A stretch of DNA of 64,000 bases from Lepidodermella squamata (GCA_047495785.1 JBLDXI010000019.1:3472001-3536000); one strand, 5' to 3'. Numbered from the stretch's first letter, positions 9,294-58,255 are shown. Program-made: numbers and translations. Notes: generated from the letters alone by a model not told the origin.

Positions 9294-10237
9294 ATGGCAA
9301 GTCAATGTGAGTCAACTTTTCAGGCAGGAAATTTGCTCCAACATGTACTTTTTCAGCAAATCTCGTATTCTGCTTTCTTTCCATTTTCGCCGTCAATTTA
9401 GCGAAAGCGCAGTGGGAGAAGGCTGTAATGGTTGTTCCAATGGCTACAGATCTCATCGATAAAAGGGGGGACACGAAAGACGTGTGTTCTACTTCCGGAA
9501 AATTTGTCGCTGCAACTGCAGAGAAACCAGGCTACACGGCTGACGAGGGAAACTCAATCGCTACCTGGAGTTATATCCCGATGTGCTCCGACTCAGCTAA
9601 AACAGGCTTTGAGGCCGGGTTCGGAGTAAGCCTTAATTTCTACGCGCTAAATGAAAAAAATGGCAAGGGCGACATTTTGACACTTCGGAATGATGCTAAA
9701 GTCGTCAAGCTTGACTACGAAACCATAATGGAAGGGGACAATGTTAAATCGGTTCAAGTCAACCTTCGCCTGTCGGGAGAAAACAACTATGTCTCACGAA
9801 CAATCAAAGGAAGCAATTGGAATTTTATCGCCGTTACCTATGCCAGCAAAACATTCAACTTATGGACACTGGAAAACACCGAGTACAAATCAAGCGCAAA
9901 GGGGGCTGATATAGGAAATTGGCAGACGTTCAGCCTCACGCTCGGAAAATCTCCCGATGTCACGGTTGGATGGAACAAGAACAGCCGCGTCAATTGCCTA
10001 GCCGCCTACAACAAAGCACTGACTGCTGACGAAGTTGGAAAAATCGCCAAAGAATGTGCAGATGTTACCAAGATTACTTTTGCCGAAAAGATTAAAGATT
10101 TTTCAAGGTTGAGGGATAATCTATGTGCTCCCGAGCCCGCCAAAGTTAACCCTCCAGAATGTAACGGGGCAGGTGCCACAGGAGCTTCCCTGCTACTGCC
10201 GACGTCAATGTTTTGGGTTTTTGTTAGATGTTTCTAA
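9294..10237 (+). CDS. Secreted, probably GPI-anchored LamG/pentraxin-like (concanavalin A fold) protein, 2 exons
   Basis: ATG 9294 plus a small GTGAGT..TTTCAG intron gives MASQSNLVFCFLSIFAVNLAKA (signal peptide). LamG-like WNFIAVTY..LTLG..CLAAYNKALTADEV; C-terminus NGAGATGASLLLPTSMFWVFVRCF resembles a GPI signal. Confidence 0.75.
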
Positions 10238-22548: not shown

Positions 22549-23338
22549 TTCCTCAGCTCGTAGCAGTGAAGAGTTTTCGACGACAAAGGTCGAACCGCCT
22601 GGGGGAAACTGTTTAGTTCTAGCTTTCTTATTGAGCGGAAACGAAGGCAAGCCATGGCGACAAAAGGCGGCCTCATCAATTATTGATGATTGCACCACCA
22701 GGTATCGTTAATCCTTCAAAAGACAACGCGCGTGTGTGCAACTATGCGACGGGAGATACACAGGGTGATAAACAGCATTCAATTCAGCAATCGATCGACA
22801 TCCCTGAAAAGGATGATAGCTGCTACCTTTGTATTACCCGAGGCAGACTTGGCGGATATTCAAAATGTTTATTTTGCGCTATTCGTTTCTATTCTAGGAA
22901 AGTCGCCACCCATCGATATTTTATTCGGACTTCTACCAATGTTTTATTGAAGTTTCGCTGCCTTTATAGTCGAGTCTTTCTTTTGGCGATTTCTGGGTGG
23001 GAAATTGGGCCTGAACCGTGAAGCGGCTGTCGAGGGTTCTCGAACTTGCATGAGATCGCATCTAATGACAAATCGATAATGACCTCAAAATCAAAACCAA
23101 ATCATAATTTCGATAAATTCGAGCAAAGTGAGATTTTTATTGCGTAAAATTTTACATATTAAAAATAGAAACGATACCACAAAGGTTCACACGCATAAAA
23201 TTGGAAAATTAAATGCAACTAAAATAATACAGCGAAGCCAATGAATGTCAATATATCATGTCGAGCGAGTCAAACGGGCATCGAAAGTCTAAAGAGTTAT
23301 TTTATTTCATGATCGATAGGGTCTCCAGGAGGCCTAGC

Positions 23339-26300
23339 CTAAAATACGAGAACTTCTGCGATAACAAGTTGCATGTCACCGGTCTTATCAACGCTGACAT
23401 ATCGCCCGCTTAACGGAGGCGTGCAGTGGAAAGCGAGACCTTGGCCTGCGACTACGGGCGGCATCTGGTAACCGTTCCAGAAATCACAGACATCGTTAAG
23501 CGCTAGATTAGAACCAGCATTATCCCCAACTCGTATAGTCAGGCCAATGCTGGACGATGCAGAGTAGTCAACCCAGTCTGTGCCACTAGCCATGACGAGG
23601 ACGACCTTCGAGACCGAAGAGCGAATGCCCAGATCGACCTGGAACCAAGTGGGTCCAGTGAACGCCTGAGATCCAGTCGGAGTGAGAAAAGACCCATCTG
23701 TTAGTCCGGCATTGGTGTCAGCCGAAAAATTGGACGAAGTGACCTTTTGCAGCCAGGCGATGTTGGACGAGTTGTCGCTATTGCTCACCTCAACTTTGCA
23801 AACCACCATATCGTAACCATTCGTCTTCGACAAGAGGGTGACATACCGGCCTGACTTCGGTGGATAGCAAGGCACAGAGATCCTAGCATCGTAAGGAACG
23901 CTCTTGATATCATTTCCATCATTGCATTTGGGTAAAGCATCGGCATCTGTAGCTCCACCGGCTGGGACTGTGTCGGACACAGCAACTTGAAGTCCCTTAA
24001 TCGGAAAATCAGCCTCGTCGTAGCTGCAGCCCTTGAAACTGAACTTGCCAGCTGGTTGCGTGTTGAAATCGTCAACGTAGAGCCGAACAGCCCCAGCGAC
24101 CATATAAGGCTTCAAATAGTTTATTACTGGCGAGGTGTTTGGACCAGTTGATGGCCCATCGAATATTCGAATTCGAGATCCGTTGTGGCCAAATGTATAT
24201 GCCACCCATTTGCTGGACGAGCCTCCCAATCGGCTGGTCAAGTGGTACTTCGTGATGGCAGCTGTTGTCGTTGAATGAGCCTGAACCATGACGATGTTGA
24301 TGATCTTATTCTCATTGAAGTCAAGTTGAAAATATGGTTGCGGATCGCTTGGGAGTGACATCCAGTCATTGGTGTTTCCAATATTAGCTTGTTGTAAACT
24401 GCCGCTCGAGGTATTCCAGCTCGAAGCAGAAGCAACGGCACTCCCATCGAAGAGCTCGATGTTGCAGAATTGCTCTATCGGAATCGAAGCTTACAAGTGA
24501 ACATGACAACAAAGTCATATACTCACGCGCGCAACCTCGGACCAGAAACTTCAAACAGATGGTGTTGCTCCACGTTTGAGGATAAATTTGCAAATATCGT
24601 GCAACAATGTAAGGCCTAAGAAAATTCCACTGCAGACTCGTCGCATCGCTGTTTCCAGTAAATATCTGTCAAAGAAGCTTTAAGTCACGTTTTATCAGGG
24701 CACGACTTTCAGGCTTACTTTGATTACCCCGGGTTGAACCCGACTTGTGTAACTTCTGTAGCTGTAGCCTTGAGTGCTCATTTGCAAACGGAAACTAGAA
24801 ACATAACAATTCCCCGCAGAGTCCCCGGCGGTAGCTATTGAGTGAACGATCATCTGCTCGCCAAAGTCTAGCTGAATGTACTGAGCAGCCGACAGGGTAG
24901 AAGGAGTCCAACTGCAGGCGAGGGAGCCTCGAATATCAGTAGCATTGGGGCAGGCGGCCATGGCTGAGCTGTTTGAGCTGTATGACCACACTGCATTCGA
25001 CGTCAAGTCATTCTCGCAAACGTGGCCCTCAACTAATGAATCATTAGATACTGATTGCGAATCTCACACATTTTGAAGTACTCACGAATGTTGGGCGTTG
25101 GAATGGACGTTGCTAGCTCCATTGCAAGGTATTGATCTATTAAGGCCTTATAGACAAAAAACCAAGCCATCGGGCCTTCAAAACGCATGCTATGGAATGG
25201 ATCCTATTGAGAATAAATCATTTCTCTGGTATTTCACGTCTCAATTTCTTATATTCTTACCACTCCGAGGTACATTATATCCGTAGCATCAGGTACGCAG
25301 TCCGGCATACTGCTCATTGCGCTTCGAGTCCCGTCACGATACGTCGTCAGTTTGCTGTTTCCTGCCGTGAAATCAGCGGCCATCAAAAAGTGCTCCCATA
25401 CATTGTAATTCATGCCCGTCTGGTACAGAGTGTTCCATCCAGAACAAGCTAGCGTGTATTCAGTTCTGTTGGTAGACGTTAACAAACGAATCGTGTGTCT
25501 CGGCGATGTGGAGGCGTACATAGCAACAAGAGCACTTCCAGTACTTGTTGATATATTCGGAAAGGTGAGAGCAAATAAACCGACGGCGTAAGGAGGAATA
25601 GGAGCCGTAGTGAGGTTTGCTGAAGGGTTGACCGATGATGTGTAATTGATCGCCTGGAGATTTGACGAGGTACCAGTGTAGGAAAAGCGATAGTTATTGG
25701 TTTCGCCCGATGCCCAAGGGAAAGATGCACCAGCGGTTGAGGGACCGTTTAATGAGAACCAGGGTGTCATATCGTCGACTGAGCTGAGACCCATGCTGAA
25801 ATCGAGAGGAGCTACCACTGACGCTTTCATGTCACCCGCCGATGTTAGAGGACACCGCTTGACTGAATGTATCTGTCTCCGAGTCAAAGCGGTTTGGTAA
25901 AACTGCAAACAAGCGTAAGCTGCTCCTGCGCTTCCGGGGCCTCCAACTCTGAAATAGTTTTGAACAGTGTCCAAACCAACTCCGGGGCAGTTCACTGCAA
26001 AAGTATCGATTTTCTCTCCCTCCTGGACAAGGGAAATTGTCGAGCTTGAGTAATCGTAGACAAAGCCAACGTAGCTCCAACGGTTCAGAGGGAATCTTCG
26101 CGTTGATGGGTAAGTTCTGTACGTAGAGTTGCCTCGACAGGCAAAGTATGTGACCAAGGTTTGCTGTGGAGATATTCCCAAGGCGACTTTCGGGCTACCC
26201 GATGATGAATCATCATACCATCCAAGCAGCCACTGACCAAGCCCAGTCGGTTTTATGTGAACCAACATGGTCATTGACCAGGGATACGCAATTCCAGCTG

Positions 26301-28831
26301 CAGAGGCGTTCACGTACAAGTAATCTGATTGCGTCGGCATGAGCCATGCCCTTTCCAAGAAAAGCATGAGCTGAAATGCTAAATATCGAAAGTCTTACGA
26401 GGTGGAATAGCTCAAGATTTTGTCACAAACAGGAGAACCAGCCGAGACTAGGCTTGTAGATGAGATTAGGTCCACAAGCCTGCAATCGAGCGGATACAAA
26501 GCAGTTGGCGGTGGTGCTGAAAATAGGAAAATATTTAGACGTAGCGATTTATTTTTGGTTTAGGTTATGTTATCCGAAAAAGCTTGATCTTACTTCTCCA
26601 AGGGCATACACTGGCCTGTTCGGCTTCAGCATTGTCTAGCGGTCTTCGGTAAATTTGCACGCACGATAGTTTTCCGGTCCATGGGCCGCGAGCTGTTACG
26701 TAGGCGTTGACCTTGAGAGCATTTACTGCTGGGCAGCTGATAGATTTAAGGTATTTCTCCACGCGATTGATGTGGATCCGAATAGTGTTAGAGCGGCAAT
26801 CAGCTGTAACCACAAAGAAAAACCATTGATTGACTGGTACCGTGAATCCAGTTGTTTGCATAGCTGTTGGTGCCGGAAAATAGCTGTTATCTGCGTCATC
26901 GGAAATGCTTCCTACTCTCATCTGCGAATCGCTTGCAATTTTGATATTAAACCCTCTCCTCGAGCTGAAAGAAAGGGAGTATTTTAATGTAAATGTATGC
27001 GCTTCCCCACTGACCTCCCCTGTGCGAACGAGGAAAAGAGGTAGAAATCACTTGATGCCGCCGTGTGATATACCCAGGCAGCGTAAGTGTAACCATAAGT
27101 AAGATCCGCAGCCAAGTTATCCATTGGGATAAACAGTCCCCTGTCGGCACCAGTCCATTGAAGGGCTGACATCGGTTCATTGTTGGGCCCAGTGCCGTAG
27201 GTCAGGCCGTTGGAGAAAATTCCATTGTTACCTTTCCCACTCAGATCATCAGCTCGATGGATGATATCGAGAAGCCAGAGGCCATCAGGAACCAGAGTGA
27301 ACGAAGGAGGAAGTTGAGGGGTCAATATCTCAACCGAACTAACTGTCTTTTTTGAGCCGAGGTCAATCGTCACATAAGGCCTGTCCAGGTAGTTCAAAGT
27401 TCCAGTTTTCAACCTTGTACAGTTGAAATAGCTCTTCTGACGTATCACTCGGCCTTGAGTGATAGCTGTAGCTGCTGCTGTTTTGTAGATGCTCGTGTCG
27501 CTAGTGTAAGCCTTGGCTATCGCTGCCTTATTCGCAAGATTCGGCGAATATCTTGGGGCATTTTTGCATCCTAGAAGCTCAATTTTGAAACAGACCGAAC
27601 CAGAGAAGGCGATAGGTTCGATTCTGAAATATTGGCCAATAACTGGTCGCGGGAACACAAAAGTGGCGAGTTTCGTTCCATCGATATTCCCAGAAATCAA
27701 CGCCGACCCGGTGACGTCTCTAGTCGGTATCCAATCATCATTCATCTTAGCTTTTGAGGAGACGCGGAATGAAGTAACCCAAGCATTCAGCCTGCTGCAG
27801 CCCTGAATCTGAACTGCGGTGACAACTGTCTGTTTCCGCAAATTGACAACTAGAGGATCAATCAAAGCGCGACCAGCCATTCCCCAGTTCAGCCGAGCGT
27901 AGATAGATTGGTTAGTGGATAGTTGCCAATCTTCAACTTCTCCATTCTCAACGCCTAGTGGTTCCATGCAGTAAGCTGGGCAACCACGAAAGCCAAATCT
28001 TCCCTGTCTATTCGAGACCACTATGGTGCTATCCACAGCTGTGACAATACTGACGTATTGAAGAAGGACAGGGCGGAACAATTCGTAATTAGTCGGCGTG
28101 GAACGGCCAGCGGTTACTGGTATTGTAGCCATTCCACCTCGTCCGTTATTAATGGGGAAGAAATTGATGCCATCGAAACTGTACTCAAGACGTAATCCTG
28201 CTTGGTAATTAAACCAAAAGAAGTGAAGATGAGTTAGCCAAACAAATCGCTGCAAATCAGCCCTGATCCAAGAGCCGATGGGTGCGTCCTGAGCTAGGCC
28301 AAAATAGTAATTATGATTCGAGAAAAATCGACCCCAGTGAGGCGGCTCGCCGTTGGTTGACGATACAGCATAAGCAAAATCGCTAACATATGAATTATCC
28401 AGATCGAGTACCTCAACATCACAATGGTTGAGTTTAGAGCATGGTGCTGATCTCGCGACACCCAGAATAGCGTCCAGATACGGAAACTTGTTGCCAGCTT
28501 TGTTTGAAACACTATTTGGTGTCGCGCTGAATGAGATCACCCCGGAATTAGCGCTGACCTTGGCGATTTGGGATCCATCGATTGAAAATCGGTAAATCAA
28601 GCATGTTTTCGTAGACAGGGTGAATTGGCCAGATTCACAGGTATTGTTTGCATTACAAGCGGCCATGCATGCAGCTTGAGAGCTGACTGAGCGCGTCGCT
28701 ATCAAATGAGGGCTCAGGTCATAGCCCGGATCAATTGGGTCAATTGAAAAATCTTTATACAAGCGGTAGTGGATACCACCAAATGTTCCAGAGATCAGGA
28801 ACAGACTACAAAGAACGCAGTATACCTTCAT
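23339..28831 (-). CDS. ~1700-aa secreted mosaic lectin-like protein: SP-PAN-F5/8C x2-FTP(N half)-LamG x3-F5/8C x2-FTP(C half)-FTP, 8 exons
   Basis: Exons 28831-27015, 26964-26594, 26516-26399, 26350-25261, 25203-25086, 25032-24719, 24665-24527 and 24474-23339 sum to 5103 nt (1701 codons). Signal MKVYCVLCSLFLISGTFG; PAN SQAACMAACNANNTC; discoidin CMEPLGVENGEVEDWQL..CFKIELLGC; LamG RWSYVGFVYD..CLQFYQTALT; F-lectin WFQVDLG..CTPPLSGRYV..AEVLVF. Confidence 0.88.
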
Positions 28832-29814
28832 TACTTCAACGTTTCGTACTAGGTAAAAAGCTCCGTCTTCATTGAGGAACATGAATGCATTCTCTTAAAG
28901 TTTCTCTTAAAGAATTGCATTTGGGTTTAGGTACTAAATATTGATGATTTCAGTTTCTGTTTGCTGACTTTTCGAACGCAGGGTGGTTCAGTTGCCGTGC
29001 GATACTTTTGTTGTCAATATGTGCGTTATCCTCAAGCTAAATAATATTGTCTGAGCCAATACTTCGTTAATTCGGAAAAGAGCGGTTTGTAATACGTGCA
29101 TGCGATAAGCGTGCGATGTGTTTTCTGTCTCGGCAAGTTACCTTTTTAAAAGCGAATTACCGCGTTGCATTATTATTCGCTATGTGCTAAAACATTAATG
29201 AATACACTAATATATCGATACGCGCAAGGGGTTTTACTGTTTATCGATCAAAAGAACGGAGGAAGGTAATAACGGAGGCGGCATTCACCCATTAAACGTG
29301 TTTCGTTTTTAGATGCCATGTGCCCCTCAACTCAGTTTCATCTCGACTTCGCGCCTTGGCGCCTGATGAATTTACCAGCTGAACCTGCAATAAGTGAGCA
29401 AAAAGGTGATCAGTGGGTGCATTTTTGGGGTCGACCTCTGTGCAAAGGAGGACAGGCCTGGCGAAGGCTGCGTAAAACATTGTATTTTGGCTGCTATCGC
29501 AACAACGGGAAGTGAAGCTTGGAGTTTGTGAACCTGATTTTCTATAATTACTGATCGCAGCATTTAATTAGGCGAGAAGTCGCCGAAGATGGGCGCGAGA
29601 CCAAAGTAGACGAATAAGCAGACGAATTATACGAATATACATCCAAATAATCTGATTTCTTACCGGCGTGAACTTTGCAATTTGATGGCGCTTTTTGCTT
29701 GGGACTAATAGAGATGGACTCTTTCAAGCAGTAGTGATTCCGCAGTCGCAAAAGCAATTCTTAGTCATTTCAGAACACATTATTTTCCAGGCTGCTACCT
29801 GTTTTCTGCCGTAT

Positions 29815-31689: not shown

Positions 31690-33780
31690 TCATGAAATCG
31701 AGGCTGCATATCTAACCATCCGAACATAATATTCTTTCATCGTGACAAAATATCTGCGAACCATCCGAAAGATGTCGAAACGCGAATTTTATCCGAAAAT
31801 GTCTTTTATACATCCGAATATTAGTGATTGTGTCGCAATAAAAGGGGGCGCCATAAAAGTGCAGCGTGGCAGCCACGTGCAGAATAGAACAAGCCGGCCT
31901 GTGGAATCATTCGATATCATTCTTTGGCTTTCGATAATGCAGTTAACATTGCCAAAATTGATTTTACTCGTGACTCTGTTTTTGAGTGCGAGCGATGTTC
32001 CTTACGTCGTCAACCCAGAATTGGAGGAGGAAGATGGTCGTCCGTTGTCGCCTTCAGGGGATGAATTTGATATATTCGAATCCCTGCAACCCGGGTTGTC
32101 ATTCGTCGCCGCCAAGCAGTACATAAGGACGAACTACCCTGATTGTGGGTCGATTCGACGCATCCTCACCCTCGGAACTCAGGCTTCACGGTTTATTATG
32201 TCTGCAGAATGCGAAAAAGTGGTGCGAAGATTTGCAAATACAAGGGCACGCTGAATTACACCAACGAACAGGCTGTGTTTGTGGCCGGTGGCGAGCACAA
32301 CCATCCGCTTGTAGACAAGGGCAAAGCCATCATTACTGCTCGAGTCCGGGATTGGGTGAAGACGTTCACCATTGCGAACAACCCACCAAAGCTCATCATC
32401 AAGCTGCTCCTGGACAAAGGCTTCCCCCGTTACAGCCAGCGTCAAATAACCCAGCTGAAGCAACGAATCAAAAGTCAGCTCAAACGCGAAGCGCTGTTAC
32501 AAGGCGGAGTTGCTGAGCAAGATATCGACCTGGCTGATAACCGCTTCGGAACTGCTGAGCTGCGAGCCTGGTGCCAAGCAAGATCTCAGATCCCTGGCGA
32601 TGTCAGAACACCTTTCGTGATCCACTTTCGAATTCAAGAGACTGGTGTTGGCCGGAAACCGATGTGGACGTTGGTTATTTCAAACCGTTTCATGCTGGGT
32701 CGGCTGAGACTCATGACCAGCTTCCAAGTTGACGCGACACATAAAGTTATCATCGGTGGTCACAAGGTCTTCATTTGCGGCGGCTCGGATCGCAATCGCC
32801 ATCTTCATCCTGTGCTCCTCGCTGTATCGCGCAACGAGAATCAGCAGGCCTACGACGTCATATTTGAATCTCTTCGAACCCATGCTCCGACTTGGCAACC
32901 TCTCGCTGTTATGGCTGATGGAGCGACTTACATCAGGAATGCGATCGAAACCGCCTTTGGGTTGATGATCCTGCGGCTCATGTGTTTCTTCCATGTTATG
33001 TACAATGCTCGCAAATGGTTCGGGAGTAAGTTGATTTTGTAGACATCACGACGTTTTGAAGACAATTTCAACACAGGAGGTCGACTAAAGCTGTGGTGGC
33101 GCGTATACAAGTTGCTACAAGTCGTTCAGCTGGCTACGAGTGAGGCAGAGGTAATTCACGACGTGAAAAAGATATTTCTTCTAATTATTTTTTTCGTAGT
33201 TTCATTGCTTAGTCCAACTTATGTGGGCTGATCTGCGAAGCACCGAACACGCCGCTGTTTACGAGGAATTTATTGCCTATTTCGAGGGTGCTTACGTCTA
33301 TGGCCCATTGGCTTGTTGGTATGAGGGGGCTAACGAATTCAATCTGACCAACAATGGAGTCGAAGCCAAGAATAATGCAATGAAGAACGAAAACACCCAC
33401 CGCATTATGCACACGTTGATTAGCTTTCTTGCGATTTCTTTCGACGTGGTAATGGACTGGACAATTCATGTCATCGAATTTGCAACTGAGCCCGCTGTCA
33501 GCGACCGCTTACGTCGCGATGGCTATCAGGTATGGCTCAATTTCGAATCGGACTTCGAGAAGATCGAAGAAGGGAAGTGGCTTTGGGTCAAGTCTGGCTG
33601 GACCGTAAACGAGGAAGTGATCGAGACTTTTTTAATTTTCGGATACATCACGATGCTCGCATACATTTTGTTCGGAGTGAAAATATTATTATCCGGATGG
33701 TTAGATATTACCTCGAGATCGAAATTTCGGTATAAAATTCCGCTTATCCGGTATATTCTCAAAATACAATCAATATTCAA
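31690..33780 (+). mobile_element. Mutator-like (MULE) DNA transposon with intron-containing, probably defective transposase
   Basis: WRKY/GCM1-like YYVC..C..EHNH finger; MULE core FQVDATHK..VMADGA..CFFH..TNNGVEAKN. Frameshift near 32143; introns at ~33027-33042 (16 nt, doubtful) and 33151-33199. Degenerate inverted termini (ATATCTAACCATCCG ~31708 vs CGGATGGTTAGATAT ~33694). Confidence 0.85.
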
Positions 33781-34127: not shown

Positions 34128-35805
34128 GTATATATATATATATAAACAACAAAAGCCCGCTGTTATTAATAAATAACAGTTGCCATAACGACACTGGAGT
34201 AATTAGAATTTTCTTTGGATATGTGTTTTAAGGTTTAAGGTTATTTACAATTAACAGGTTCGTAGAGGAAAGAATTAAGCATCTTGCTGCTGCGATAGGC
34301 TATTTCCGAAAGGATTCGATGGATGGTCGGTTTGCCGATTCCTATTTTTCTTTTATTTACGAAAAAATTCAGGCGCACACAGTTATCATTAGTAGGCTTA
34401 TAGCCGACGCCCTAGGACGTTCATCTTTTCTTTAAATATTCTGATGTTGACGGTCTCAGGGAAGGTATCGCGTGGTAGGTCGTTCCATTGATTGACGATC
34501 TCTTGCATCCTTCGAAAGGGTGCCGTGTCGACCCTGTTCTTCGACGATTTTGCGAGCTGTAGTTGATGGTGGTGTTTCTCGCTCGCTGCCCTCGTTCTTG
34601 TATTCGGCTTCGGGATTTTTATAAATTTCGAGCGGACTTGTTTCGTCCCCCGACCTGCTACCATAGTTTTGTAGAGATACGTCATGACCCCGACGAATCT
34701 GCGATGGCCCAGCGGTGTCAATTTGGCTTCCGTCATCTTCACAAACCTGTTTTGAACTGCATCGAGTTTCTCCAAGGTGCTAGCCGACGCCGCGAATGTG
34801 TATGGCACCATAGCGAATTCGAGGTATGGTAGAACGTAGGTCTTGTAAGCATTTTCGAGCTGGCGTGTCGACAAGTAAGGTCTCAGTCTTAGGAGTTGCG
34901 TGATTGTCCTGTTGGCCTGACCGATCTTCTTGGTCATGCATTCCTCCATTGATAGACCGGTGTCGAGTACTAGGCCCAGTAGCGTTGTAGTGGCCGTTTC
35001 CGCTTTCGAGGGGTTGGTGCTTTCAAGCGAGCTATCTTCATTCATTCTTCTTCTTCCACAGTTGAAACGTGGATAAGAGAACCTTGTATCTATCCTCTTC
35101 TTCGGGTCCATCGAGACTCTGTGAGCTCTCGCCCACTGCATAGCCTTCTCTTCTCCAATGTCGACATCTGATTGGTTCGTGCTTCCCAGGTTAAAGTCAT
35201 CGGCGAAGGTGTACGGCTCAGGTGGGTGGTAATTGGGCTGGTCGACGATTTTGGACACCGATCGGCTGATTCCGCTATACCAGACGAGCCAGAGGGATGG
35301 CCCCAGTGCACTACCTTGGCAGATACCTGCATCTTCAGATCGAAGGCTCGACGACGCCCCGGCCACCAAGACACGGAAGTATCTGTCTGTCAGGAATGAT
35401 CGGATCATAGCGCGAACTTGTCCCTGTATGCCCGATTTCCAAAGAATGTCGAGAAGAAGAGATCTGTCCACTCTGTCGAACGCCCCACTAACATCAGTTT
35501 GGCGGAGGATGAAATATTTTCTGTCGTTTATCGCGGAGATGATGTCGATTACCACTGACAGTTGGGTATCGTTTGTGCCGCAGCCTGACAGAAAGCAGAA
35601 AGGCGGCTTGTTCTGGAGGTATTACTCCGTTAGCTATCGCGGTTTTTACGACTAGTTCAGCAAGTATTATCTCCAGGACTTTGCCTACGTGTTCACCCAT
35701 ACCCACGGGTCGATAGTTGGCCTTGTTCGATTTAGACTTCTTCTTGAAAATTGGACATACGTTAACGACCTTGAAGACTGATGGCCAGGTACCTTCAACC
35801 TTCAG
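34128..35805 (-). mobile_element. 5'-truncated non-LTR retrotransposon (CR1/L2-like RT), frameshifted
   Basis: WPSVFKVVNVCPIFKK..NYRPV..KVLE, then DVSGAFDRV..GICQGSALGP..YTFADD..YKTYVLPYLEF. A (TA)n run at ~34128-34143 may be the tail. Confidence 0.88.
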
Positions 35806-44692: not shown

Positions 44693-46225
44693 ATGATAAC
44701 AGCAGCTTTTTTCGCATTGGTTTTCGCAGTTCTCCTTATCCTCGGATGGAGAAAAGTCCTATCAGATCTGTTATGGAAACTCCCACCCGGTCCTTTGCCT
44801 CTTCCTTACATCGGCAGCTTATACCAGATGGCAATTCACGGAAAAAAGGCGAAGCTATGGCAGATAATGACGAAAATATCTGAGAAATACGGGCCTGTAT
44901 TTACGTTTTACTTCGGGCCAGTTCGTATGATAGTTCTTAATGATTCTGAAACAATTCATCAAGTTCTTATCGCTCAAGCCCGAACATTCCAACACCGCTT
45001 CGAATCTATGATTCCTGGCTTTAAAGCCATACCCTCTGGTGTCGTATTTGCTAACAACGAAAAATGGCGGAAAAATCGAAGATTTGGCCTGAAAGCCATG
45101 CGAGATTTCGGCATGGGAAAAGAAGCGATGGTGGCGAAAATTCAGGAAGAAACGCGGCATCTCCTATCAGATTTCGAGGCAATTTCGAAGTCGGGAGATG
45201 AGATCAATCCTACCCCGCTGATAACTAACTCTGTCTTTAATGTTATGAACTCCTTGGTTCTCGGGAAACGTTTCAATCGTGACGATGGAATGTTCATAAA
45301 GCTCACTAATCTTATCGAGCAGATTACAAGTCAAAATCCTGCTGAGCAAGGGGCTTTCCTCCTCATTCCTTACTTGGAAAATATATTCCTTCCAACTCAA
45401 ATCAAATACGCCCTTCAATTTGACGATAAAATCAAGTCGCTCCTCAAAAATGCCATCGAAGAACATCGCGAAGGCTACGATCCAGAAAATATCCGGGATT
45501 TCCCAGATTTATTCATCCAGGCGCAACATCAAGGCGATCCTTATTCGATTGATGAGTTCTCCAACATCATGTCGGACCTGTTCGGCGCTGGAACCGACAC
45601 TACGTCGACAGCTCTAAGCTTCTCGCTTTTCTACTTGACGAAACATCCTGAAGTTCAGCGTAAGTCCCAAGCCGCAATCGATGAAGCCATCGAGTCGGAC
45701 AGACTTCCGACTCTCACCGATCGTCAGCAATTGGTCTACATAGATGCGGTGATGTGCGAAGTTCTGCGCCATTCTTCACTAGTTCCTTTGGCGTTATCTC
45801 GCACAAATCTTCAAGAAAAAGCTTCAGTTACAGGTTAGTATCAGAAGGCATCAATAATTGAGCTTAAAATCTAATACTATTTTACAGGGTTTGACATCCC
45901 GCCTTATACTATGATTGTATTCAATCAAGCTGCTCTTAACTGGGATCGATCTTACTGGGGCAATCCAGAGGAATTTTCACCGCAGCGCTTTATCGATAAA
46001 GATGGCAAGCTGCTGGCGCATTCAAGCCATTTCTTCCCGTTCGGTCTTGGTACCCGCATCTGCCTTGGTGAAAGTCTCGCTAAAGTTGAGTACTTTATCA
46101 TGCTAACGGCTATCTTGCAGCGATATACACTCGAGCTTGTTACTAAAGAAGTCGAAGCGAGTGATTGCCATGACGGCGCCATACTGAAGGCCCCAAATTA
46201 CACATTGAGAGTCAAAAGCCGATGA
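44693..46225 (+). CDS. Cytochrome P450, clan 2-like (exons 44693-45833, 45888-46225)
   Basis: PPGPLPLP, WRKNRRF, AGTDTT, EVLR, FSPQRF, PFGLGTRICLGESLA. Confidence 0.95.
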
Positions 46226-46652: not shown

Positions 46653-48187
46653 TCACCGGCAATGAACCTTAACTTGGAAAGGAGGTGGTTTAACAACTCC
46701 GCCATCTGCGCTATCGTCGTAGTTGAACTCAGGATGGACAAGCTCGAAAGAAAAGCGGTGAAGAATCGCAACGATAAAAATGAAGAACTCTGCCCGAGCT
46801 AGTGTCTCGCCGAGGCAGATGCGTGGCCCTGTGCCAAATGGCATGAAATGACCAGAGTGGCTAACCAATTTCCCCTCCGGGCTGATCCAACGTTCAGGCG
46901 AAAAGACTTCAGGATTGCCCCAGTATTTTTTGTCGTGATGCAAAGCTCCGATGTTGTACATGACAAGCGTATTCGGCGGAATGTCGTAGCCTAATTTCGC
47001 AACAAAATAAGCTAACCAAAACTTCAAGATCGCAAATATTCTTTACCTCCAACTTGTGTATGCTCGTCCAAATTAGAATGGAACAGAGATGTTGGAACCA
47101 GGGCGCAATGTCTTAGAACTTCATGCAGCAATGCATCGATATAGACAAGATTAGGTCTATCGGCTTGATCTGGCAGCCGATCAGATTCGATTACTGCATC
47201 GATCGCCTCGTGACATTTAGCTTGAACTTCGGGGTGTTTGGTCAAGTAGAAAAGAGTGAATGCTAACGTGTTGGAAGTCGTATCCGTTCCAGCCAGAAAC
47301 ATGTCCAGCATAATTGCCGCGAAATCGGGCATACTGAAGGCATCGCCGCTTTCTTCAGCCTGGATGAACAAATCCGGGAAGTCTCGAATGTTCTCCGGAT
47401 CAAAATCGTTTCGATGCTCTTTCACTGCCTTCGTCAATCGTTCTTCGAGCAGTTCGAGGAAAGCATATTCAGCCTTTATCAGAGCCGGCTCAGCAACGTA
47501 TTGAAGCCCTGGGATGATCAAGAAAGCAGTTTGCTCTGCCGTGGTAGTACCTGTTAAAACGTGGCCGAGGTGGAGAATTTTGTGAAATACTGGGTCATCA
47601 GGCTCAAATCTCTTTCCCATAACCAAAGCGCATATAACGTTGAGTACCGCGTTCGTAACAATCAAAGCCGGGTTGAAAGGCTCATTTTTCTTAGCGAGCC
47701 CTTCGAAATGAGACAGAAGATACCGAGCTTCCTCCTGGATGCTTCCGACCATAGCCTCGCGGCCCATTCCGAAGTCACGCATAGCCTTCAGGCCGAAACG
47801 TCGATGTTTTCGCCAGCGCTCGTGGTTGGCAAAGGCTATCCCTTCGTGAATATTCTTGAGCCCTGGAACACGTTTCTCGAATCGGCCGCTAAATATTTTG
47901 CCTTGTTCAACTAGAGCTTCCTGGATAGATTTTGAATCGCCAAATGCAATCATGCGAATCGAGCCGAAGTAGAAAGTCATGATAGGCCCATGGGTTTCGG
48001 CCAATCGAGACATTGTTTTCCAGAACTTGACGCGTTTCGGCCCACCCTTGGCGATTTCATGAAGATTTCCGACAAACGGCAGAGGGATAGGACCTGGTGG
48101 TATACGAAATCTGCGGTCTGTAAGAAATAACTTCCAGCCATACAGAATTGCTAATACTGATAAGGTTACAGCAATTTCTAGCAACAT
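46653..48187 (-). CDS. Cytochrome P450, clan 2-like paralog (exons 48187-47047, 46990-46653)
   Basis: PPGPIPLP, WRKHRRF, AGTDTT, EVLR, FSPERW, PFGTGPRICLGETLA. Same intron position as its neighbour. Confidence 0.95.
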
Positions 48188-52329: not shown

Positions 52330-54706
52330 CAGTGCTCCCTCGTTAGTGGCACCCTCCTTAAAAGAACTCCCTCGTTTGTAGACCGTAATTTTGGACCCTG
52401 CTGAATAAATTAGTTGTAAATTTTTAATTAAACAAATGATAATTATTTGATAGATTGAAAAAATTAAGCGTGAAGAATTAAAATAATATAGCGTTCCTAG
52501 AAACCTAGCGCCTAGCGGCGCGTTGTCGTGGTTTTGAGAGATCCAGTTATTTCAAGTTTAGTTCAAACGAGCTGAAAGATCATCAGTGCATTAGGATGTT
52601 CTTGTGGTTTTGAAATGACTTCGATTATGCAACAGAGTGCGTGGATTAGCTGCCACTCAAGTCGTGCTGCGACTCGTCTTGCTTTTTTAGTTAAACTTTT
52701 CCATCAGAAATTACGCCAGTTTATCAGACAAAATCAGCAATTAATTTCAATAACTTCAAAAATGCCCGTCAATCTTCTATCTCCTTGATTTGCAGATTTA
52801 TTCTCAGGTCAATTGCTGATCAACAAAAAGACTCATCTGAATTGCCCTATTTTTCATTTTTTTAGCTTATTCCCGGCCAGAAAATCTCTTGAAATTTATC
52901 AATCAATCAATCAATCAATCAATTTATTTGCAAACTTCGTTCACAGGACTAGAAGGGCACGCAGGCCTCTTACACTAACCCGTGGCAATAAGATTTCCTT
53001 TACAATATTTCTTCAGATTCACGCGGTACAGATTTCGTTTTACGATATTGTTCTTTATATCAGCAGGTAAATTATCGTCAAAGTTAAATACGGTAGTCGG
53101 CAATCGATTCCAAGTGTTTACAGTACGGTTCAAAAAATAGTTCTTATAAATAGGTTTGGTGGGATTTTTGCAATTCATATTCGGATTTAAAACAGAGAAA
53201 CGAAAACGATGACCTCGATTGTTATTCAACAAAAATTTTATATTATTAGAGATAGATGTTTTAACAGACCCATTTATTATTTTGAAAAGGAAGCATAGAT
53301 CGTATATGAGGCGCCGTTCTTCGAGAGACACTAGCCTAAATTTTTTTAGACGCTCGGAATAGGACGGGCGCGAAGGATCGAAGGTTGATAAATTAAGAGC
53401 ACGGCGAGTAAAGTAAGATTGCAATTTTTCTAATTTGTCAATTTCATTTTTAAACCAAGGTGACCAGATGCAAGTACAATACTCTAGCAACGGGCGAACA
53501 TATGTACAGTAGGCACGTACTAACGTCTCAGGAGACTGACCTTTCAGAGCACGTAGTATCAGGTTTGCACGTAGGTAGGCTTTAGAAACAATCGAATCGA
53601 ATTTTAGAAACAATGGGCTTTGAATTCTAGCTTTTCATCAATAAGAAGACCCAAGTCTTTATAGTTTAGACATCTTTGAAGCAAGTTTCCCCCTAGGAAG
53701 ATTTTGGATTTTTGAAGCCAAGATGAAGAACCGCACATTTGTCAATAGAGAGCTTTAGTTGCCAAGTTTCAAGCCAGACAAAGATGTTTTCAAGAGATAG
53801 AGATAGACGTTCAGAGAGAGATGAATCATTTTTACAAAAGACTATGTATAATTTGCAGTCGTCAGCGAACAGTTTAATGGAGACACCTTCAGGTAGGATA
53901 TCGGTAAGGTCATTAATGTAGAGCAGAAATAACAGAGGGCCCAGAACGGAACCCAGAGGTACGCCACTGGTTACGCAAATTTCATCGCTTAGGGTTCCGT
54001 TGACATTGACACGTTGGGTACGATTAGTAAGATAGATTTTATCATCAAGAAGAGGAGACGTTTGAGGAGTAATTAAGTCGTCTAAGGTAAAAACTGAGGA
54101 AAATTGTTTGTTAAGAGCTTCAGCCTTCTTAGCATCATCAAGACAGAGTACACCATCCTTGTCTAGTAACGCAGGAATTTTCGAAGTGTTTCGGAGTTTC
54201 GAGTTAACATAATTGTAAAATTTTGACACGTCATTTGAGGCGATCATATTTTTTACATTTTCGTTCTCAAAGTTGTCTACGGCCTTTTTGTAATCAGCAG
54301 CGAGTCTGTTAAAATTAGAGAGCAACCTATTATAGTTTGGCGATTTAAAGACAGTTTTTCGAAGTTTACGCCAAACATTCAGCTTTTTCGAATCAATTTT
54401 TCTTATATTTTTTAAAAAAACAAGGCCAACCAGTCAAATCAAAGCCACCCTGCCAAATAAGAATAAAAACTTGGCGACGAACTTATGATTCATAGTGTTG
54501 TTGTTTCACAGCCTTCAGCGAGCGCAATTTGTATTGACAAGTAATCCGTGTCTGTCTCTTTCTGCGCGTTGGCATGGCAACTGTCTTAAGACGTAAAAAC
54601 GGTCTATTTTTAGCTCCTGCATTCAATTACAGCCCTCGTTAAAGCTTTCCCTTGTTTAAAGACCGGGTCTGGCTCCCGACCCAGTGCTTTTATCGAGGGA
54701 GCACTG
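52330..54706. mobile_element. pogo/Tigger-like MITE (TA TSD) split by a LINE insertion
   Basis: TA-CAGTGCTCCCTCG at 52328 and CGAGGGAGCACTG-TA ending at 54708; internal CCCTCGTT repeats. Confidence 0.8.
52898..54420 (-). mobile_element. CR1-like LINE, 5'-truncated and internally deleted, (ATTG)n tail
   Basis: KAEALNKQFSSVFT..YLTNRTQRV..SGVPLGSVLGPLLFLLYINDL..LFADD..YCTYVRPLLEYC..SYSERL; AATAAA followed by (TTGA)n at 52898-52930. Confidence 0.92.
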
Positions 54707-54708
54707 TA

Positions 54709-57700
54709 ATGATCTTGTTACTAGCGGCGTAACCAACACTTTCGAGCTTTATCGCCCAACCTTAGTAAGACATGTTAGAACCGTGACTGCCACAGATAAC
54801 TTTCCGGGAACGGCAAATGCCCAAAGTCGACAGGGACGGATCGGTTTCTCAGGTTGCCCAGCTAACTGCATGGAACCCTTGGGCATGGAGAATGGAGAAA
54901 TCGAAGATTGGCAACTTTCGATCAACCAAACGTTCTACTCTAGGTTGAATTGGGGGATGGCAGCCGGGGCTTCCCAGCAATATTATACAATAAACCTTAG
55001 AAAACAAGCAATTGTCATGGGCATCGAGTTTCTAGGTTGCAGTCGGCTGAATGCATGGGTGACGACATTTCGAGTGTCCTACAAATCCAACCCTAACGAT
55101 GCATGGGTATAGATTCAGGATTCTAACAGCCAAATCAATTTTGCAGGCAATGTGGATGCCTCACATCCTACAACCGTGATATTTCTGAAGTCAATCATAG
55201 GCCAGTTTTTTTAAATCGACCCTGTAACAATCTCAGGGGTAACATGCTTCAAGGTCGAGCTTCTAGGCTGCAAAAATGTACCGAGATACTCCGTCAACTT
55301 GGCATCAGGTTCAGCTGTCGTTAAGGCCTATACGACGCAGACAGTATCTAACGGGCTGGCAAATGTTGTTGTAACTCAGGGCCGTAAGATTCGCGAGAAA
55401 AGCTTTACCAACTGCACTAGGATGAAGACAGGGACGTTGAACTATCTAGACAGACCTTACATCACAATAGATTTGGGCTCATCCCAAACTATAACCTCGG
55501 TCGAGATAGTTACACCACAACTTCCGCCCTTGGTCACCCTGGTTCCAGATGGTCTCTGGCTGCTTGACATCCTTCATCGAGCGGACGATTTGAGCTGCAA
55601 TGGGAATAACGGTATCTTTTCTAACAGTTTGGCTCACACAAATGGACCGGATAACATTCCGATGAGCGCACTTAGCTGGAACGGAGCAGACAGGGGGCTT
55701 TTCATTCCAATGGATAATATGGCAGCTGACAGAACAACTGGCTTCGCTTATACTGCATGGGTGTACCATCAACAGGCCACATCGGATTTCTTTCTTTTTT
55801 CGTCGTCAGAAAGGGGAAGGTAAGGCCTGAAGCTACATACTTATGATTTAGCTTCGTTGCGCAACATTTAGCGCGGCTCGCGGATTGTATATAGCAATTC
55901 AATCTAATTCCGTCATCAAAGCTGGGTCGTTACGACCAGATACGGACAGTTCAACTTTCCCGTTCATGACCGCTGCTGTAGCAAACTTGGCCTATTACGC
56001 GGTTCCGGCAAATCGGTGGTTTTTTCTCGCCGTTACTTTCGACTGCCAAAAAAGTCTCGCTAGAATTTACATCGACCTTGTCGAAAAAGCTATAGCCAAT
56101 GTTGGTTGTTCTGGTGCACCTGCAATTTCGGTTAGCTCTTATATCGCTATGAGAGGCCCGTGGAGTGGAAGGCTTTCCTGCGTCCAGGTCTACAAAAGAC
56201 CGTTGGATACCGTCAGTTGGGGTAATCTGGGTCATTGGGGCTATTCGGACGAATGTTCATCCAAACGGGAGAATGAGCATGGCTCCAAAACTACCCGGCA
56301 CGGAGTTAGGTGGAAAGACGACCCACATGCCATAAAAATTTCATGACCTGAGAGTAAGTGGTTGTGAAGATATGGGCTTACCTTCAGGTGTAAGTTTAAC
56401 TCAGTTTAAGCACTGTTCTGCGTTGAATTACCTGGACCAGATGAGAATTTTGCTGTACCTAGAAAATTCGCTAATTTACTATACTGATAATTAAAAAAAA
56501 CTAACTAAGCTAAAAACCATCGATATGCACTGCATTCGAATAATTGCAAAAAAATGCCAACTTTTGTTTGGAAAAAAATTGTTTCGTGGCCTGGACTCGA
56601 ACCCCCAGTTCGGCAGGCCAAAGTGAAAAAACCCGATAAACCACAGGGGGACCCTTTGTCATAAAATTGGGGTCCGAAAATTCATGCTAAAATTCATGGG
56701 CATTAATTTCAGTCCAAAAACTCAAAATTACCCTAATTCCTGGGCACACTTTTCGAGCAACAATACAAGAACTATCGTAATTCACCTGGAAGAGCCAACA
56801 AATTTATTCTATTACTAAAATCGCATTGTTTTCCCATGGTTGGTGCTAAGTTAACCGTTCATTGACAATAGAAAATCAAATTGAATCGATAGCAATACGA
56901 TTTTATCAATTTTGCCCTAGGAAAATGAACTAAAATTAATCTCTCAGTGAACAAGTGAAAATGGGCTGCGTTGGTAAGTGGTAAGCGCCACATGTTACGT
57001 GTCCACATTTCAAATAATACCCATCTTTAGGTTTGCCCTGAGAAATCGTGTGATTTCGTAATTAATACACAATGAATTAATGGCCGTGGAATTAGTTTCA
57101 CTTTTTGAGCATGATTTGAGATGCATTTTGAAAATCTGTGAATTATGTAGGATACTCACAGGGCCTTATTGAGGGAATATTACAAGCTAAGAGTCGGAAT
57201 CCAAGTTGGGGTGATTTTTTTCTGGTGAGGGATTTCACCTTTCTAGTGAGCTATGTGAGCTTTTGAAGGGATCCAGTTAGGATTATACTTAGGTTCAAGG
57301 TTTAGGGGCCTGATTACGGAAAATGAGTACTTCAATTTTATCTGTGATCTGAGCACGAATCTTATATTTGTTTGTATTTGCAGCTCCTGCACCGATCGGG
57401 CTGTTCCCCCTCGCTTGCAACGTGACAGGTCTAATCGCGTCGTCTAACTTTTTTTCAGTTGGTTCGCCAACTTGTGATAGCATCATGTCATTCACCAGCT
57501 CGTAAGATACTTAATTCCAATGCCATGTTTGAACCCGAGTTTTCTAGGGCAATGACGTTCCCAACTCAATCAGACTACATCTACCTGAACTCGTCTGCGG
57601 CAAGGTTTTCTCACCCCTGGTCAATGACTTTACTAGTTCATGTTAAGCCAGCTGGAACATCGCAGTGGCTACTTGACTGGTACAGGAGCTTGGATTCCGA

Positions 57701-58255
57701 CCAGCCAGTCATCGGGCTTGGAATAACGCAAGAGCAACGATTGATTATAGTATGCAGTTGTCGAGAGTTCCCAGTCAACAAAACTCTAACATCCTCGCAC
57801 CCATTCCGTCTCAATCGCTGGAGCTACGTCGGCTTCATCTACGACCACAGTAATTTGACCATATCGTTACTGCAGCAGGGCGAACGACAACCGTTCAGTT
57901 GAAATGCAACGATATAGGCTTTAATGCGATACAAAATTTCTTCCGCATCGGTGGACCTGGTAGCGCCGGAGCTAGCTTCGCGTGTCTTCAGTTCTACCAG
58001 ACAGTACTGACCAGGAAGCAAGTGCACTCAGTGAAAAGATGCCCTATCGCCTCCACACCTGATATGAAAGCATCTGTAGTTGCCCCGCTCGATTTCACGT
58101 TGGGCCTAGTTTCGATCGATGACCCAGCGACGCCTTGGTTCAATCTCAGCGGCCCCTCAACGTCAGGAACAACATTTCCTTGGATGACTGGGGAGTCGCG
58201 AAACGTCCGAATCTCCTATTCTACCAACAACTACTTGCAGTCGACCACCTTCTGA
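54709..58255 (+). pseudogene. Truncated pseudogene paralog of the 23339-28831 mosaic lectin gene
   Basis: High similarity (CMEPLGMENGEIEDWQL; KTGTLNYLDRPYITIDLG; HSVKRCP..DMKASVVAPLDF). In-frame stops TAG 55110 and TAA ~55212, ~1.1-kb insertion from 56210, frameshift near 57890, both ends missing. Confidence 0.88.
56210..57290. mobile_element. Insertion interrupting a pseudogene exon; probable DNA-transposon remnant
   Basis: Homology breaks at RPLD|TA-CCGTCAGTTGGGGTAATCTGGG. The matching right TIR was not found. Confidence 0.55.

What the first reader, a model, noticed from the sequence alone, without database searches (positions are those of the whole stretch)
23780..27545. F-type lectin domain split by an insert of ~975 aa (3 LamG + 2 discoidin domains) at its sugar-binding loop
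Seen in sequence: an FTP N-half (NLANK..AITQG..NCTRLK..RPYVTIDLGSKKTVSSVEILT, ~27545-27320) stops abruptly. The matching C-half (PIKGLQVAVSD..PKC..ISVPCYPPKSGRYVTL..MVVCKVEV, ~24005-23780) appears only after five other domains. Established: in fucolectins this break point is the R-x-D-C-C-x-x-R fucose-binding loop, and the Cys of CTH pairs with the Cys of LCEVEV. Both Cys are retained in the split domain, while the intact terminal FTP has lost both. Inference: the halves fold together and close a giant disulfide-clasped loop, turning a lectin into a structural clasp. The N-junction is the same in the paralog at ~55520, arguing against misassembly.
Basis: partly seen in the sequence, partly recalled or inferred. 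Interest (0 to 1): 0.85.

Follow-up and report, generated by a model that had tools for sequence, protein, structure and literature searches.

The report
F-type lectin split by five domains
A secreted protein of a small invertebrate has one sugar-binding (F-type lectin) domain cut in two by about 975 residues of five other domains placed at its sugar-binding loop; a distant relative keeps the same layout, so it is a real and unusually large case of one domain nested inside another.

Summary
An expressed 8-exon gene on the minus strand (28882-23342, 1717 aa) encodes signal peptide, PAN, 2 discoidin, FTP N-half (aa 440-521), 3 LamG and 2 discoidin (aa 522-1496, 975 aa), FTP C-half (aa 1497-1570), then an intact FTP.

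- **Junctions:** both lie inside continuous exons. Intron-spliced contigs show the gene is transcribed.
- **Complementary halves:** against a fucolectin profile the N-half covers columns 1-66 and the C-half columns 75-138. Only the CDR4 fucose-binding loop is missing. Joined, they match at 97% probability.
- **Neighbours are complete:** in a predicted model of the ortholog the N-half is the one unfolded stretch between two folded domains.
- **Conservation:** a roughly 28%-identical metagenome ortholog keeps the whole layout.
- **Cysteines:** the AAA Cys50/Cys146 equivalents are both present here and both absent there.
- **Second insertion:** the ortholog's terminal FTP carries a SUEL lectin domain in the same loop.
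- **Paralog:** the copy at about 55.5 kb is a pseudogene fragment.

That the halves fold together is well supported but untested. The joined sequence could not be folded with these tools. The "clasp" role is inference. This is a new variant of domain insertion, with an insert about six times its host.

The parts
23342..28882 (-). Coding region of the gene (8 exons, 1717 aa; stop codon at 23341-23339). The likely true start is Met18 at 28831, in front of a signal peptide.
   Evidence: ORF blocks. Splice model with one open frame. Spliced contigs of run X1.
27015..28882 (-). Exon 1: signal peptide, PAN, discoidin 1, discoidin 2, FTP N-half, first part of LamG1.
   Evidence: Continuous ORF. Intron 27014-26965 seen as a joint in X1.
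26594..26964 (-). Exon 2: rest of LamG1.
   Evidence: X1 joints 26964/27015 and 26516/26594 with GT..AG ends on the minus strand.
26399..26516 (-). Exon 3: start of LamG2.
   Evidence: X1 joints. Donor and acceptor checked.
25261..26350 (-). Exon 4: LamG2 and most of LamG3.
   Evidence: Acceptor from an X1 joint. The donor at 25261 is the best in-frame GT..AG solution; it is not seen directly in the listed joints.
25086..25203 (-). Exon 5: end of LamG3.
   Evidence: X1 joint 25032/25086. Acceptor chosen.
24719..25032 (-). Exon 6: first part of discoidin 3.
   Evidence: X1 joint. The loose end of an X1 contig reads across the exon 6/7 join (...PGVIK|IFTGN).
24527..24665 (-). Exon 7: rest of discoidin 3.
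   Evidence: An X1 contig piece, 24527-24653, ends exactly at the predicted donor.
23342..24474 (-). Exon 8: discoidin 4, FTP C-half, intact terminal FTP.
   Evidence: Continuous ORF. Acceptor predicted.
28562..28726 (-). PAN/apple domain (aa 53-107).
   Evidence: Pfam PF00024, E 1.9e-6.
27983..28441 (-). Discoidin-like domain 1 (aa 148-300), divergent.
   Evidence: No Pfam hit here. The collinear ortholog piece hits PF00754 at E 1.2e-13.
27566..27982 (-). Discoidin domain 2 (aa 301-439).
   Evidence: Pfam PF00754, E 9.5e-12.
27320..27565 (-). FTP N-half (aa 440-521; strands beta1-beta5 by alignment). Holds Cys488 at 27421-27419.
   Evidence: hhalign to a fucolectin profile: template columns 1-66 (global) and 18-65 (local, 67%), against 8% for a discoidin profile. 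Pfam PF22633 positions 18-37, E 0.06. Aligns to residues 2-63 of the protein's own intact FTP, z 3.5.
24005..27319 (-). The insert: aa 522-1496 (975 aa), made of LamG1 (528-745), LamG2 (747-953), LamG3 (955-1190), discoidin 3 (1194-1338) and discoidin 4 (1343-1489).
   Evidence: Pfam PF13385 and PF00754 hits. Coordinates.
23783..24004 (-). FTP C-half (aa 1497-1570; strands beta6-beta11 by alignment). Holds Cys1523, Cys1542 and Cys1565 (23800-23798).
   Evidence: hhalign 96% to fucolectin-profile columns 75-138, against 2% for discoidin. Custom HMM 12 bits, columns 92-138. Aligns to residues 80-146 of the intact FTP, z 8.6. Weak PDB hit to the C-terminal ends of both domains of 3CQO.
23342..23782 (-). 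Intact terminal FTP (aa 1571-1717). It lacks the Cys50/Cys146 equivalents and the His-Arg-Arg triad.
   Evidence: Pfam PF22633, E 8.7e-5. Predicted model matches eel agglutinin 1K12 at Z 14.7, rmsd 2.5 A, 130 residues.
54660..58252 (+). Partial duplicate (end of discoidin 1, discoidin 2, FTP N-half, LamG1, part of LamG2) with the same N-junction at 55514. It is a pseudogene.
   Evidence: 58% identity to aa 252-636. In-frame stops at 55110 and 55212, frameshift near 57870, end of homology at 58252.

Best explanation
This is a discontinuous (nested) F-type lectin domain in a secreted multi-domain protein.

The N-half supplies strands beta1-beta5 and the C-half strands beta6-beta11 of one jelly-roll. 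I propose they come together within the same chain. The 975 residues between them (LamG x3, discoidin x2) then loop out from CDR4, the top-face loop that normally holds the fucose-binding Arg79, Asp81, Cys82-Cys83 and Arg86.

Because that loop and the basic triad are gone (His52 to Arg, Arg79 to Thr, Arg86 to Pro by alignment), the domain probably no longer binds fucose. It would instead act as a hub that holds the two ends of a five-domain loop together. In this species the hub would be locked by the equivalent of the AAA Cys50-Cys146 disulfide (Cys488-Cys1565).

Shown:
- one expressed gene;
- complementary halves with only CDR4 missing;
- complete neighbouring domains;
- deep conservation of the layout.

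Inferred:
- the fold-together step;
- the disulfide;
- the hub role.
For: 1. **One gene.** Both junctions lie inside open exons. Four GT..AG introns are seen directly as joints in X1 contigs and one more across a loose end. DNA of a second sample spans both junctions.
2. **Complementarity.** The N-half covers profile columns 1-66 and the C-half columns 75-138. The joined halves score 97.3% probability (E 6.5e-11) over columns 1-138. In local mode a single alignment runs across the junction. Against the protein's own intact FTP, the N-half matches residues 2-63 and the C-half residues 80-146.
3. **Published topology.** Both sheets mix strands of both halves (beta5, beta8, beta11 and beta2, beta3, beta10, beta6, beta7), and the termini pair with each other. 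Neither half can be a closed fold alone (PMC5712786).
4. **Neighbours are complete.** The terminal FTP alone matches 1K12 residues 2-151. In the ortholog model, discoidin 2 (pLDDT 75-84) and LamG1 (58-89) fold, while the N-half between them does not (29-58).
5. **Conservation.** Ortholog L001/L002 is collinear over aa 156-1716 at about 28% identity and keeps both halves, which are as conserved as the other domains.
6. **Cysteines.** The Cys50/Cys146 equivalents are both present here and both absent in L001 and in both terminal FTPs.
7. **Same loop, second insertion.** In L001's terminal FTP that loop holds a SUEL lectin domain.
8. **Purifying selection.** Of 38 listed coding variants, 26 are synonymous and 12 are not. 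In the C-half the count is 7 to 1.
Against: - No structure of the two halves together was computed, so pairing is inferred from sequence register and known topology.
- The N-half alone is only weakly recognised: hhalign 42-67%, Pfam E 0.06, no PDB hit.
- The Cys co-occurrence rests on two orthologous split domains only.
- An insert about six times the host goes against the reported rule that inserts are smaller than hosts (PMC13114784). That makes cis folding kinetically demanding.
- Short contigs do not prove a single full-length transcript.
- Two splice joints (25261/25203 and 24527/24474) are predicted, not seen in the listed joints.
Confidence: 0.7

Rival explanations
1. Complementation in trans. 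The N-half of one chain pairs with the C-half of another (domain swapping). The split domain would then drive dimer or polymer formation, possibly disulfide-linked, instead of closing a loop within one chain.
For: It fits the same sequence evidence as the cis model. The very long insert (975 aa) lowers the local advantage of cis pairing. AAA-type lectins are known to oligomerise (PMC5712786).
Against: - Nothing specific points to it.
- The linkers at both junctions are short (about 8 and 7 residues).
- Every inserted domain type (LamG, discoidin) has adjacent termini, so a closed loop is easy to form.
- The SUEL insertion in the ortholog's terminal FTP is small and most simply read as a cis insertion.
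Confidence: 0.12
2. The halves are leftovers that do not pair. Each would be an unfolded or independently packed linker left by domain shuffling or partial deletion, with no joint fold.
For: - The N-half is weakly recognised and is modelled as unfolded when alone.
- The fucose-binding residues are lost.
- The pseudogene copy shows that the region is prone to rearrangement.
Against: - Both halves are kept with the same boundaries across about 28% identity and are as conserved as the folded domains.
- Variants in the C-half are 7 synonymous to 1 non-synonymous.
- Core-strand motifs are retained (the VDLG-type strand, GRYV, the last strand).
- The Cys pair is present or absent together.
Confidence: 0.13
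3. Artefact. Either two genes or a misassembly, or an isoform that splices the insert out to give a normal FTP.
For: Only short contigs were available, and three joints of the read table were not shown.
Against: - Both junctions are inside open exons, only 7-10 residues from the neighbouring domains.
- An independent DNA run spans both junctions.
- The ortholog has both junctions in single ORFs.
- There is no GT at the N-junction that could pair with an AG at the C-junction.
Confidence: 0.03

Closest known systems
Canonical F-type lectin domains (eel agglutinin AAA, PDB 1K12; striped bass MsaFBP32, PDB 3CQO)
   Same: - Sequence register over the whole domain once the halves are joined.
- Equivalents of Cys50/Cys146 and Cys108/Cys124 (PMC5712786).
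- The intact terminal copy has the same fold: 1K12 at Z 14.7.
   Different: - The domain is not contiguous.
- CDR4 is replaced by 975 aa of five domains.
- The His52/Arg79/Arg86 triad and the Cys82-Cys83 pair are absent.
- Two reviews of the family (PMC5712786, PMC12221842) describe tandem and mosaic arrangements but no interrupted domain.
Domain insertion (A1-B-A2) architectures in general, including the multi-level nested insert of cyanobacterial RNA polymerase
   Same: A host domain is interrupted in a surface loop by other folded domains. This is common, seen in about 20% of multidomain proteins (PMC13114784).
   Different: That survey reports inserts consistently smaller than their hosts. 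Here the insert is about six times the host (975 aa against about 156 aa). It is a string of five independent lectin-like domains in an extracellular protein.
Nested extracellular domains such as the integrin beta-subunit (beta-I domain within the hybrid domain, itself within PSI) and the laminin L4 module inside an LE repeat (from my own knowledge, not checked here)
   Same: Secreted or cell-surface proteins in which a small disulfide-bonded host domain is completed only after an inserted domain.
   Different: Different folds. Their inserts are one domain, not five.
Terminal FTP of the metagenome ortholog (L001:5060-6585), which carries a SUEL/rhamnose-binding lectin domain
   Same: Same host fold and same loop (FTP HMM columns 2-71 before the insert, 81-126 after it).
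   Different: - The insert is a single domain of about 80-110 aa.
- It sits in the other FTP copy.
- It is absent from the window's protein.

Membership tests
F-type lectin domain (FTLD / FTP) | Sequence similarity to the family over the whole domain of about 140 aa | tested here: met
   Joined halves against a profile of 15 fucolectin domains: 97.3% probability, E 6.5e-11, query 7-156 to template 1-138. C-half alone 96%; N-half alone 42-67%. Met only when the two halves are taken together.
F-type lectin domain (FTLD / FTP) | Jelly-roll F-type fold | tested here: inconclusive
   Shown for the intact terminal copy (1K12 at Z 14.7). The split copy could not be folded as one unit. The N-half alone is modelled as unfolded, and the C-half alone reaches pLDDT 51-78.
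F-type lectin domain (FTLD / FTP) | Fucose-binding basic triad (His52, Arg79, Arg86 of AAA), with the adjacent Cys82-Cys83 in many members | tested here: not met
   By alignment His52 becomes Arg490, Arg79 becomes Thr521, Arg86 becomes Pro1497, and the CDR4 loop is replaced by the insert (residues named in PMC5712786). The terminal FTP lacks the triad too.
F-type lectin domain (FTLD / FTP) | Disulfides equivalent to Cys50-Cys146 and Cys108-Cys124 | tested here: met
   Cys488 and Cys1565, and Cys1523 and Cys1542, are at the aligned positions. Only the presence of the residues was tested. The bonds themselves cannot be tested here.
F-type lectin domain (FTLD / FTP) | Fucose binding | not testable with these tools
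   Needs a glycan-binding assay.
Domain insertion (host A1 - insert B - host A2) | Both host segments and the insert lie on one polypeptide | tested here: met
   One open 8-exon frame, spliced contigs, and junctions inside exons.
Domain insertion (host A1 - insert B - host A2) | Host segments form a single fold | tested here: inconclusive
   Supported by register, published topology, conservation and the Cys pattern. No joint structure was computed.
Domain insertion (host A1 - insert B - host A2) | Insert smaller than host, the reported general rule | tested here: not met
   The insert is 975 aa and the host about 156 aa. The rule is stated in PMC13114784.

The most novel reading that the evidence does not exclude
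In this animal lineage the CDR4 loop of the F-type lectin fold has become a reusable insertion site. It took five domains in one FTP copy and a SUEL domain in another.

The split FTP works as a small, sometimes disulfide-locked hub. It closes a loop of about 1,000 residues made of lectin-like domains into a lariat-shaped extracellular protein. A sugar-binding site would thus have been traded for an architectural role, and the usual size rule for domain insertions broken.
Probability: 0.45. Interest if true: 0.7.

Novelty: new variant of a known kind. Interest (0 to 1): 0.6.

Why it matters
Domain insertion is common, but a 156-residue host closing around a 975-residue, five-domain insert is far outside the reported size range. 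It also uses up the very loop that defines the lectin's function.

If the halves do pair, the protein offers:
- a natural test case for how far apart two halves of a beta-sandwich can be and still fold;
- a possible design principle, a small clasp that closes large loops of binding domains;
- an example of a lectin fold turned into a scaffold.

It also shows that gene predictors and domain scanners miss such genes. No full-length relative exists among 1.84 billion representative proteins. Pfam sees the N-half only below its threshold and does not see the C-half at all.

Tried and rejected
- **Pfam on the isolated halves.** The N-half gives only a sub-threshold PF22633 hit and the C-half none.
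- **PDB sequence search.** Nothing for the N-half; E 1.7 for the C-half. I replaced these searches with a profile built from 15 fucolectin domains.
- **Search for relatives.**
  - The word-index protein search with the last exon found nothing.
  - The exhaustive representative search found no full-length relative, only ORF fragments P0006 and P0072.
  - A profile search added P0164.
  - The metagenome DNA scan returned two loci that match LamG1 only: L005 is bacterial, L004 was not read further; neither is family.
- **Extending contigs L003 and L006 to reach their C-halves.** The contigs end in discoidin 4.
- **Cryptic splice sites that would remove the insert.** There is no GT at the N-junction.
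- **Cys488 register.** The global hhalign alignment places it two columns away from the family Cys. The HMMER alignment places it exactly there (C-T-R against C-T-H). I followed HMMER and note the disagreement.
- **Folding the joined halves or aa 440-1570.** Not done.
- **Organism.** An Atlas look-up of a P450 gave no usable taxon. The gastrotrich assignment comes from earlier notes and was not tested here.
- **Opposite-strand joints in run X1.** I read them as library or assembly chimeras, not biology.
Full report
**What is there.** The minus strand between 28882 and 23342 carries a run of long open blocks. With GT..AG introns of 48-77 nt they join into one 8-exon frame of 1717 aa. The domain order is:
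- signal peptide (from Met18);
- PAN (aa 53-107);
- a divergent discoidin (148-300);
- discoidin 2 (301-439);
- FTP N-half (440-521);
- LamG1 (528-745), LamG2 (747-953), LamG3 (955-1190);
- discoidin 3 (1194-1338) and discoidin 4 (1343-1489);
- FTP C-half (1497-1570);
- an intact FTP (1571-1717).

These assignments come from Pfam, from the ortholog's Pfam hits and from the coordinates. The stretch between the halves is exactly 975 aa. There is no membrane anchor, because the protein ends with the last FTP strand.

**One gene, and expressed.** Both junctions lie inside exons. SSVEILT is followed in frame by PQLPPSFT and the LamG1 start. The closing GC of discoidin 4 is followed after 7 residues by PIKGLQVAV.

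Run X1 (2015, labelled a guessed RNA run) holds contigs across the whole gene. Four of its joints skip 50, 77, 48 and 53 nt with GT..AG ends on the minus strand. One loose end reads across a fifth join. One contig piece ends exactly at a sixth donor. Only cDNA gives such joints. Run X2 (2024), from a related sample, shows none and covers both junctions as unspliced sequence, including one 2.8-kb contig over the N-junction. Two joints (25261/25203 and 24527/24474) are predicted only, and three joints of the table were not displayed. No GT sits at the N-junction that could pair with an AG at the C-junction to remove the insert.

**The halves are complementary parts of one F-type lectin domain.** Library searches on each half alone are weak:
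- Pfam PF22633 positions 18-37 for the N-half (E 0.06), and nothing for the C-half;
- PDB sequence search gives nothing for the N-half, and E 1.7 to the C-terminal ends of both domains of 3CQO for the C-half.

I therefore built a profile of 15 bona fide fucolectin domains. Three come from P0088, which the representative search returned. Twelve come from proteins that their sources name fucolectins.
- Profile-profile comparison puts the N-half on template columns 1-66 (18-65 in local mode, 67% probability, against 8% for a discoidin profile).
- It puts the C-half on columns 75-138 (96%, against 2% for discoidin).
- The joined halves score 97.3% (E 6.5e-11) over columns 1-138.
- In local mode one alignment runs straight through the junction.
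- A swapped C+N order aligns only the C-half.
- Against the protein's own intact FTP, the N-half aligns to residues 2-63 (z 3.5) and the C-half to residues 80-146 (z 8.6). Only the loop MASGTDWVDYSASSSI is left uncovered.

The uncovered family columns 66-74 are the NRxDCCxxR stretch, which is CDR4.

**Why neither half can stand alone.** The family review describes the fold as two sheets, beta5/beta8/beta11 and beta2/beta3/beta10/beta6/beta7. The N- and C-termini pair at the bottom, and the disulfides are Cys50-Cys146 and Cys108-Cys124. The fucose triad is His52, Arg79 and Arg86, and CDR4 carries Arg79, Asp81 and Cys82-Cys83 (PMC5712786).

A break between beta5 and beta6 leaves strands of both halves in both sheets. 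By alignment, Cys488 and Cys1565 are the Cys50/Cys146 pair, and Cys1523/Cys1542 are the Cys108/Cys124 pair. The triad is gone: Arg490, Thr521 and Pro1497 stand in its place.

**The neighbours do not absorb the halves.**
- A predicted model of the last exon product has a terminal FTP that by itself matches eel agglutinin residues 2-151 (Z 14.7, rmsd 2.5 A, 130 residues). The top fold matches are all F-type lectins.
- In a model of the ortholog fragment P0006, discoidin 2 (pLDDT 75-84) and LamG1 (58-89) fold. The N-half between them is the one unfolded stretch (29-58, almost no secondary structure).
- The alignments behind both models were shallow, so this is consistent with the halves needing each other but is not proof.

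**Other genomes.**
- No full-length relative exists among 1.84 billion representative proteins. The best hits are discoidin arrays.
- Three ORF fragments from metagenome contigs cross the N-junction: P0006, P0072 and P0164.
- The 30-kb scaffold behind P0006 (L001, and its twin L002) is collinear with aa 156-1716 at about 28% identity. It keeps PAN, both first discoidins, the N-half, three LamG, two discoidins, the C-half and a terminal FTP.
- Per residue, the halves are as conserved as the other domains.
- L003 and L006 (a third lineage, about 23% identical to the window's protein) share the N-junction, but their contigs end in discoidin 4.
- The Cys50/Cys146 equivalents are both present in the window's split domain. 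They are both absent in L001's split domain and in both terminal FTPs. That is the pattern expected of a bonded pair, on a small sample.
- In L001 the terminal FTP is itself interrupted at the same loop by a SUEL/rhamnose-binding lectin domain: FTP HMM columns 2-71, then PF02140, then columns 81-126 in the next exon. So this loop has accepted insertions twice.

**Selection.** Of the 38 listed coding differences between the window and runs X1/X2, 26 are synonymous. In the C-half the count is 7 synonymous to 1 non-synonymous.

**The paralog.** The copy at 54660-58252 on the plus strand is 58% identical over aa 252-636 and has the identical N-junction, ending at 55514. It has in-frame stops at 55110 and 55212, a frameshift near 57870, and no homology beyond 58252. 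It has no LamG3, no discoidin 3 or 4, and no C-half. It is a pseudogene fragment. It rules out misassembly of the N-junction but says nothing about function.

**Reading.** Most likely (0.7) this is a nested, discontinuous F-type lectin domain whose halves pair in cis. The five-domain insert would project from the former sugar site. The domain would then serve as a hub that ties the ends of the loop together, covalently in this species through Cys488-Cys1565.

The rivals are:
- pairing in trans, which would drive oligomers (0.12);
- halves that do not pair (0.13);
- an artefact or two genes (0.03).

**Against what is known.** Domain insertion is frequent, about 20% of multidomain proteins, and can be deeply nested. 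A recent survey reports inserts consistently smaller than their hosts (PMC13114784). Here the insert is about six times the host. Two reviews of the F-type lectin family describe tandem and mosaic arrangements but no interrupted domain, and a text search for the combination found no paper. I file this as a new variant of a known kind.

**Organism.** The window holds a Cys-loop receptor exon, TSP1 and P450 genes, so it is from an animal. Earlier notes of this scan suggest a gastrotrich, which I did not test.

**Not done.** The decisive fold of the joined halves, or of aa 440-1570, could not be run. 

Noticed in passing
L001:5060-6585: In the metagenome ortholog the terminal F-type lectin domain is itself split at the same CDR4 loop by a SUEL/rhamnose-binding lectin domain (PF02140). 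The C-part of the FTP lies in the next exon.
   Followed up: partly
window 54660-58252 (+): Partial duplicate of the gene with two in-frame stops (55110, 55212), a frameshift near 57870 and a truncation. It is a pseudogene fragment.
   Followed up: yes
window 59255-64000 (+): At least four repeated modules of about 200 aa (DFYAE... near the start, W-N/D-C near the end) with no Pfam match. The last one is followed by a thrombospondin type 1 repeat. This may be an undescribed extracellular repeat family.
   Followed up: no
window 44693-45838 (+) and 47024-48187 (-): Two cytochrome P450 genes facing each other, each with a long exon of about 380 aa. The nearest Atlas clusters are arthropod CYP18/CYP6-like.
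   Followed up: partly
window 32143-33042 (+) and 34398-35555 (-): A MULE transposase ORF and a reverse-transcriptase ORF lie between the lectin gene and the P450 pair. They look like transposon insertions.
   Followed up: no
window 9428-10237 (+): A stand-alone ORF with a weak Laminin_G_3 match (E 6e-4). It may be another LamG-bearing gene in the neighbourhood.
   Followed up: no
window 23300-28950, run X1: Eleven 'opposite strands' joints, about 90-170 nt apart (most about 90-100), are spread over the whole gene in the X1 contigs. They look like fold-back chimeras of the library or the contig assembly, not like biology.
   Followed up: no
window 23342-28882 (-): All seven introns of the gene are 48-77 nt long. 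The related metagenome contigs show equally compact genes.
   Followed up: partly
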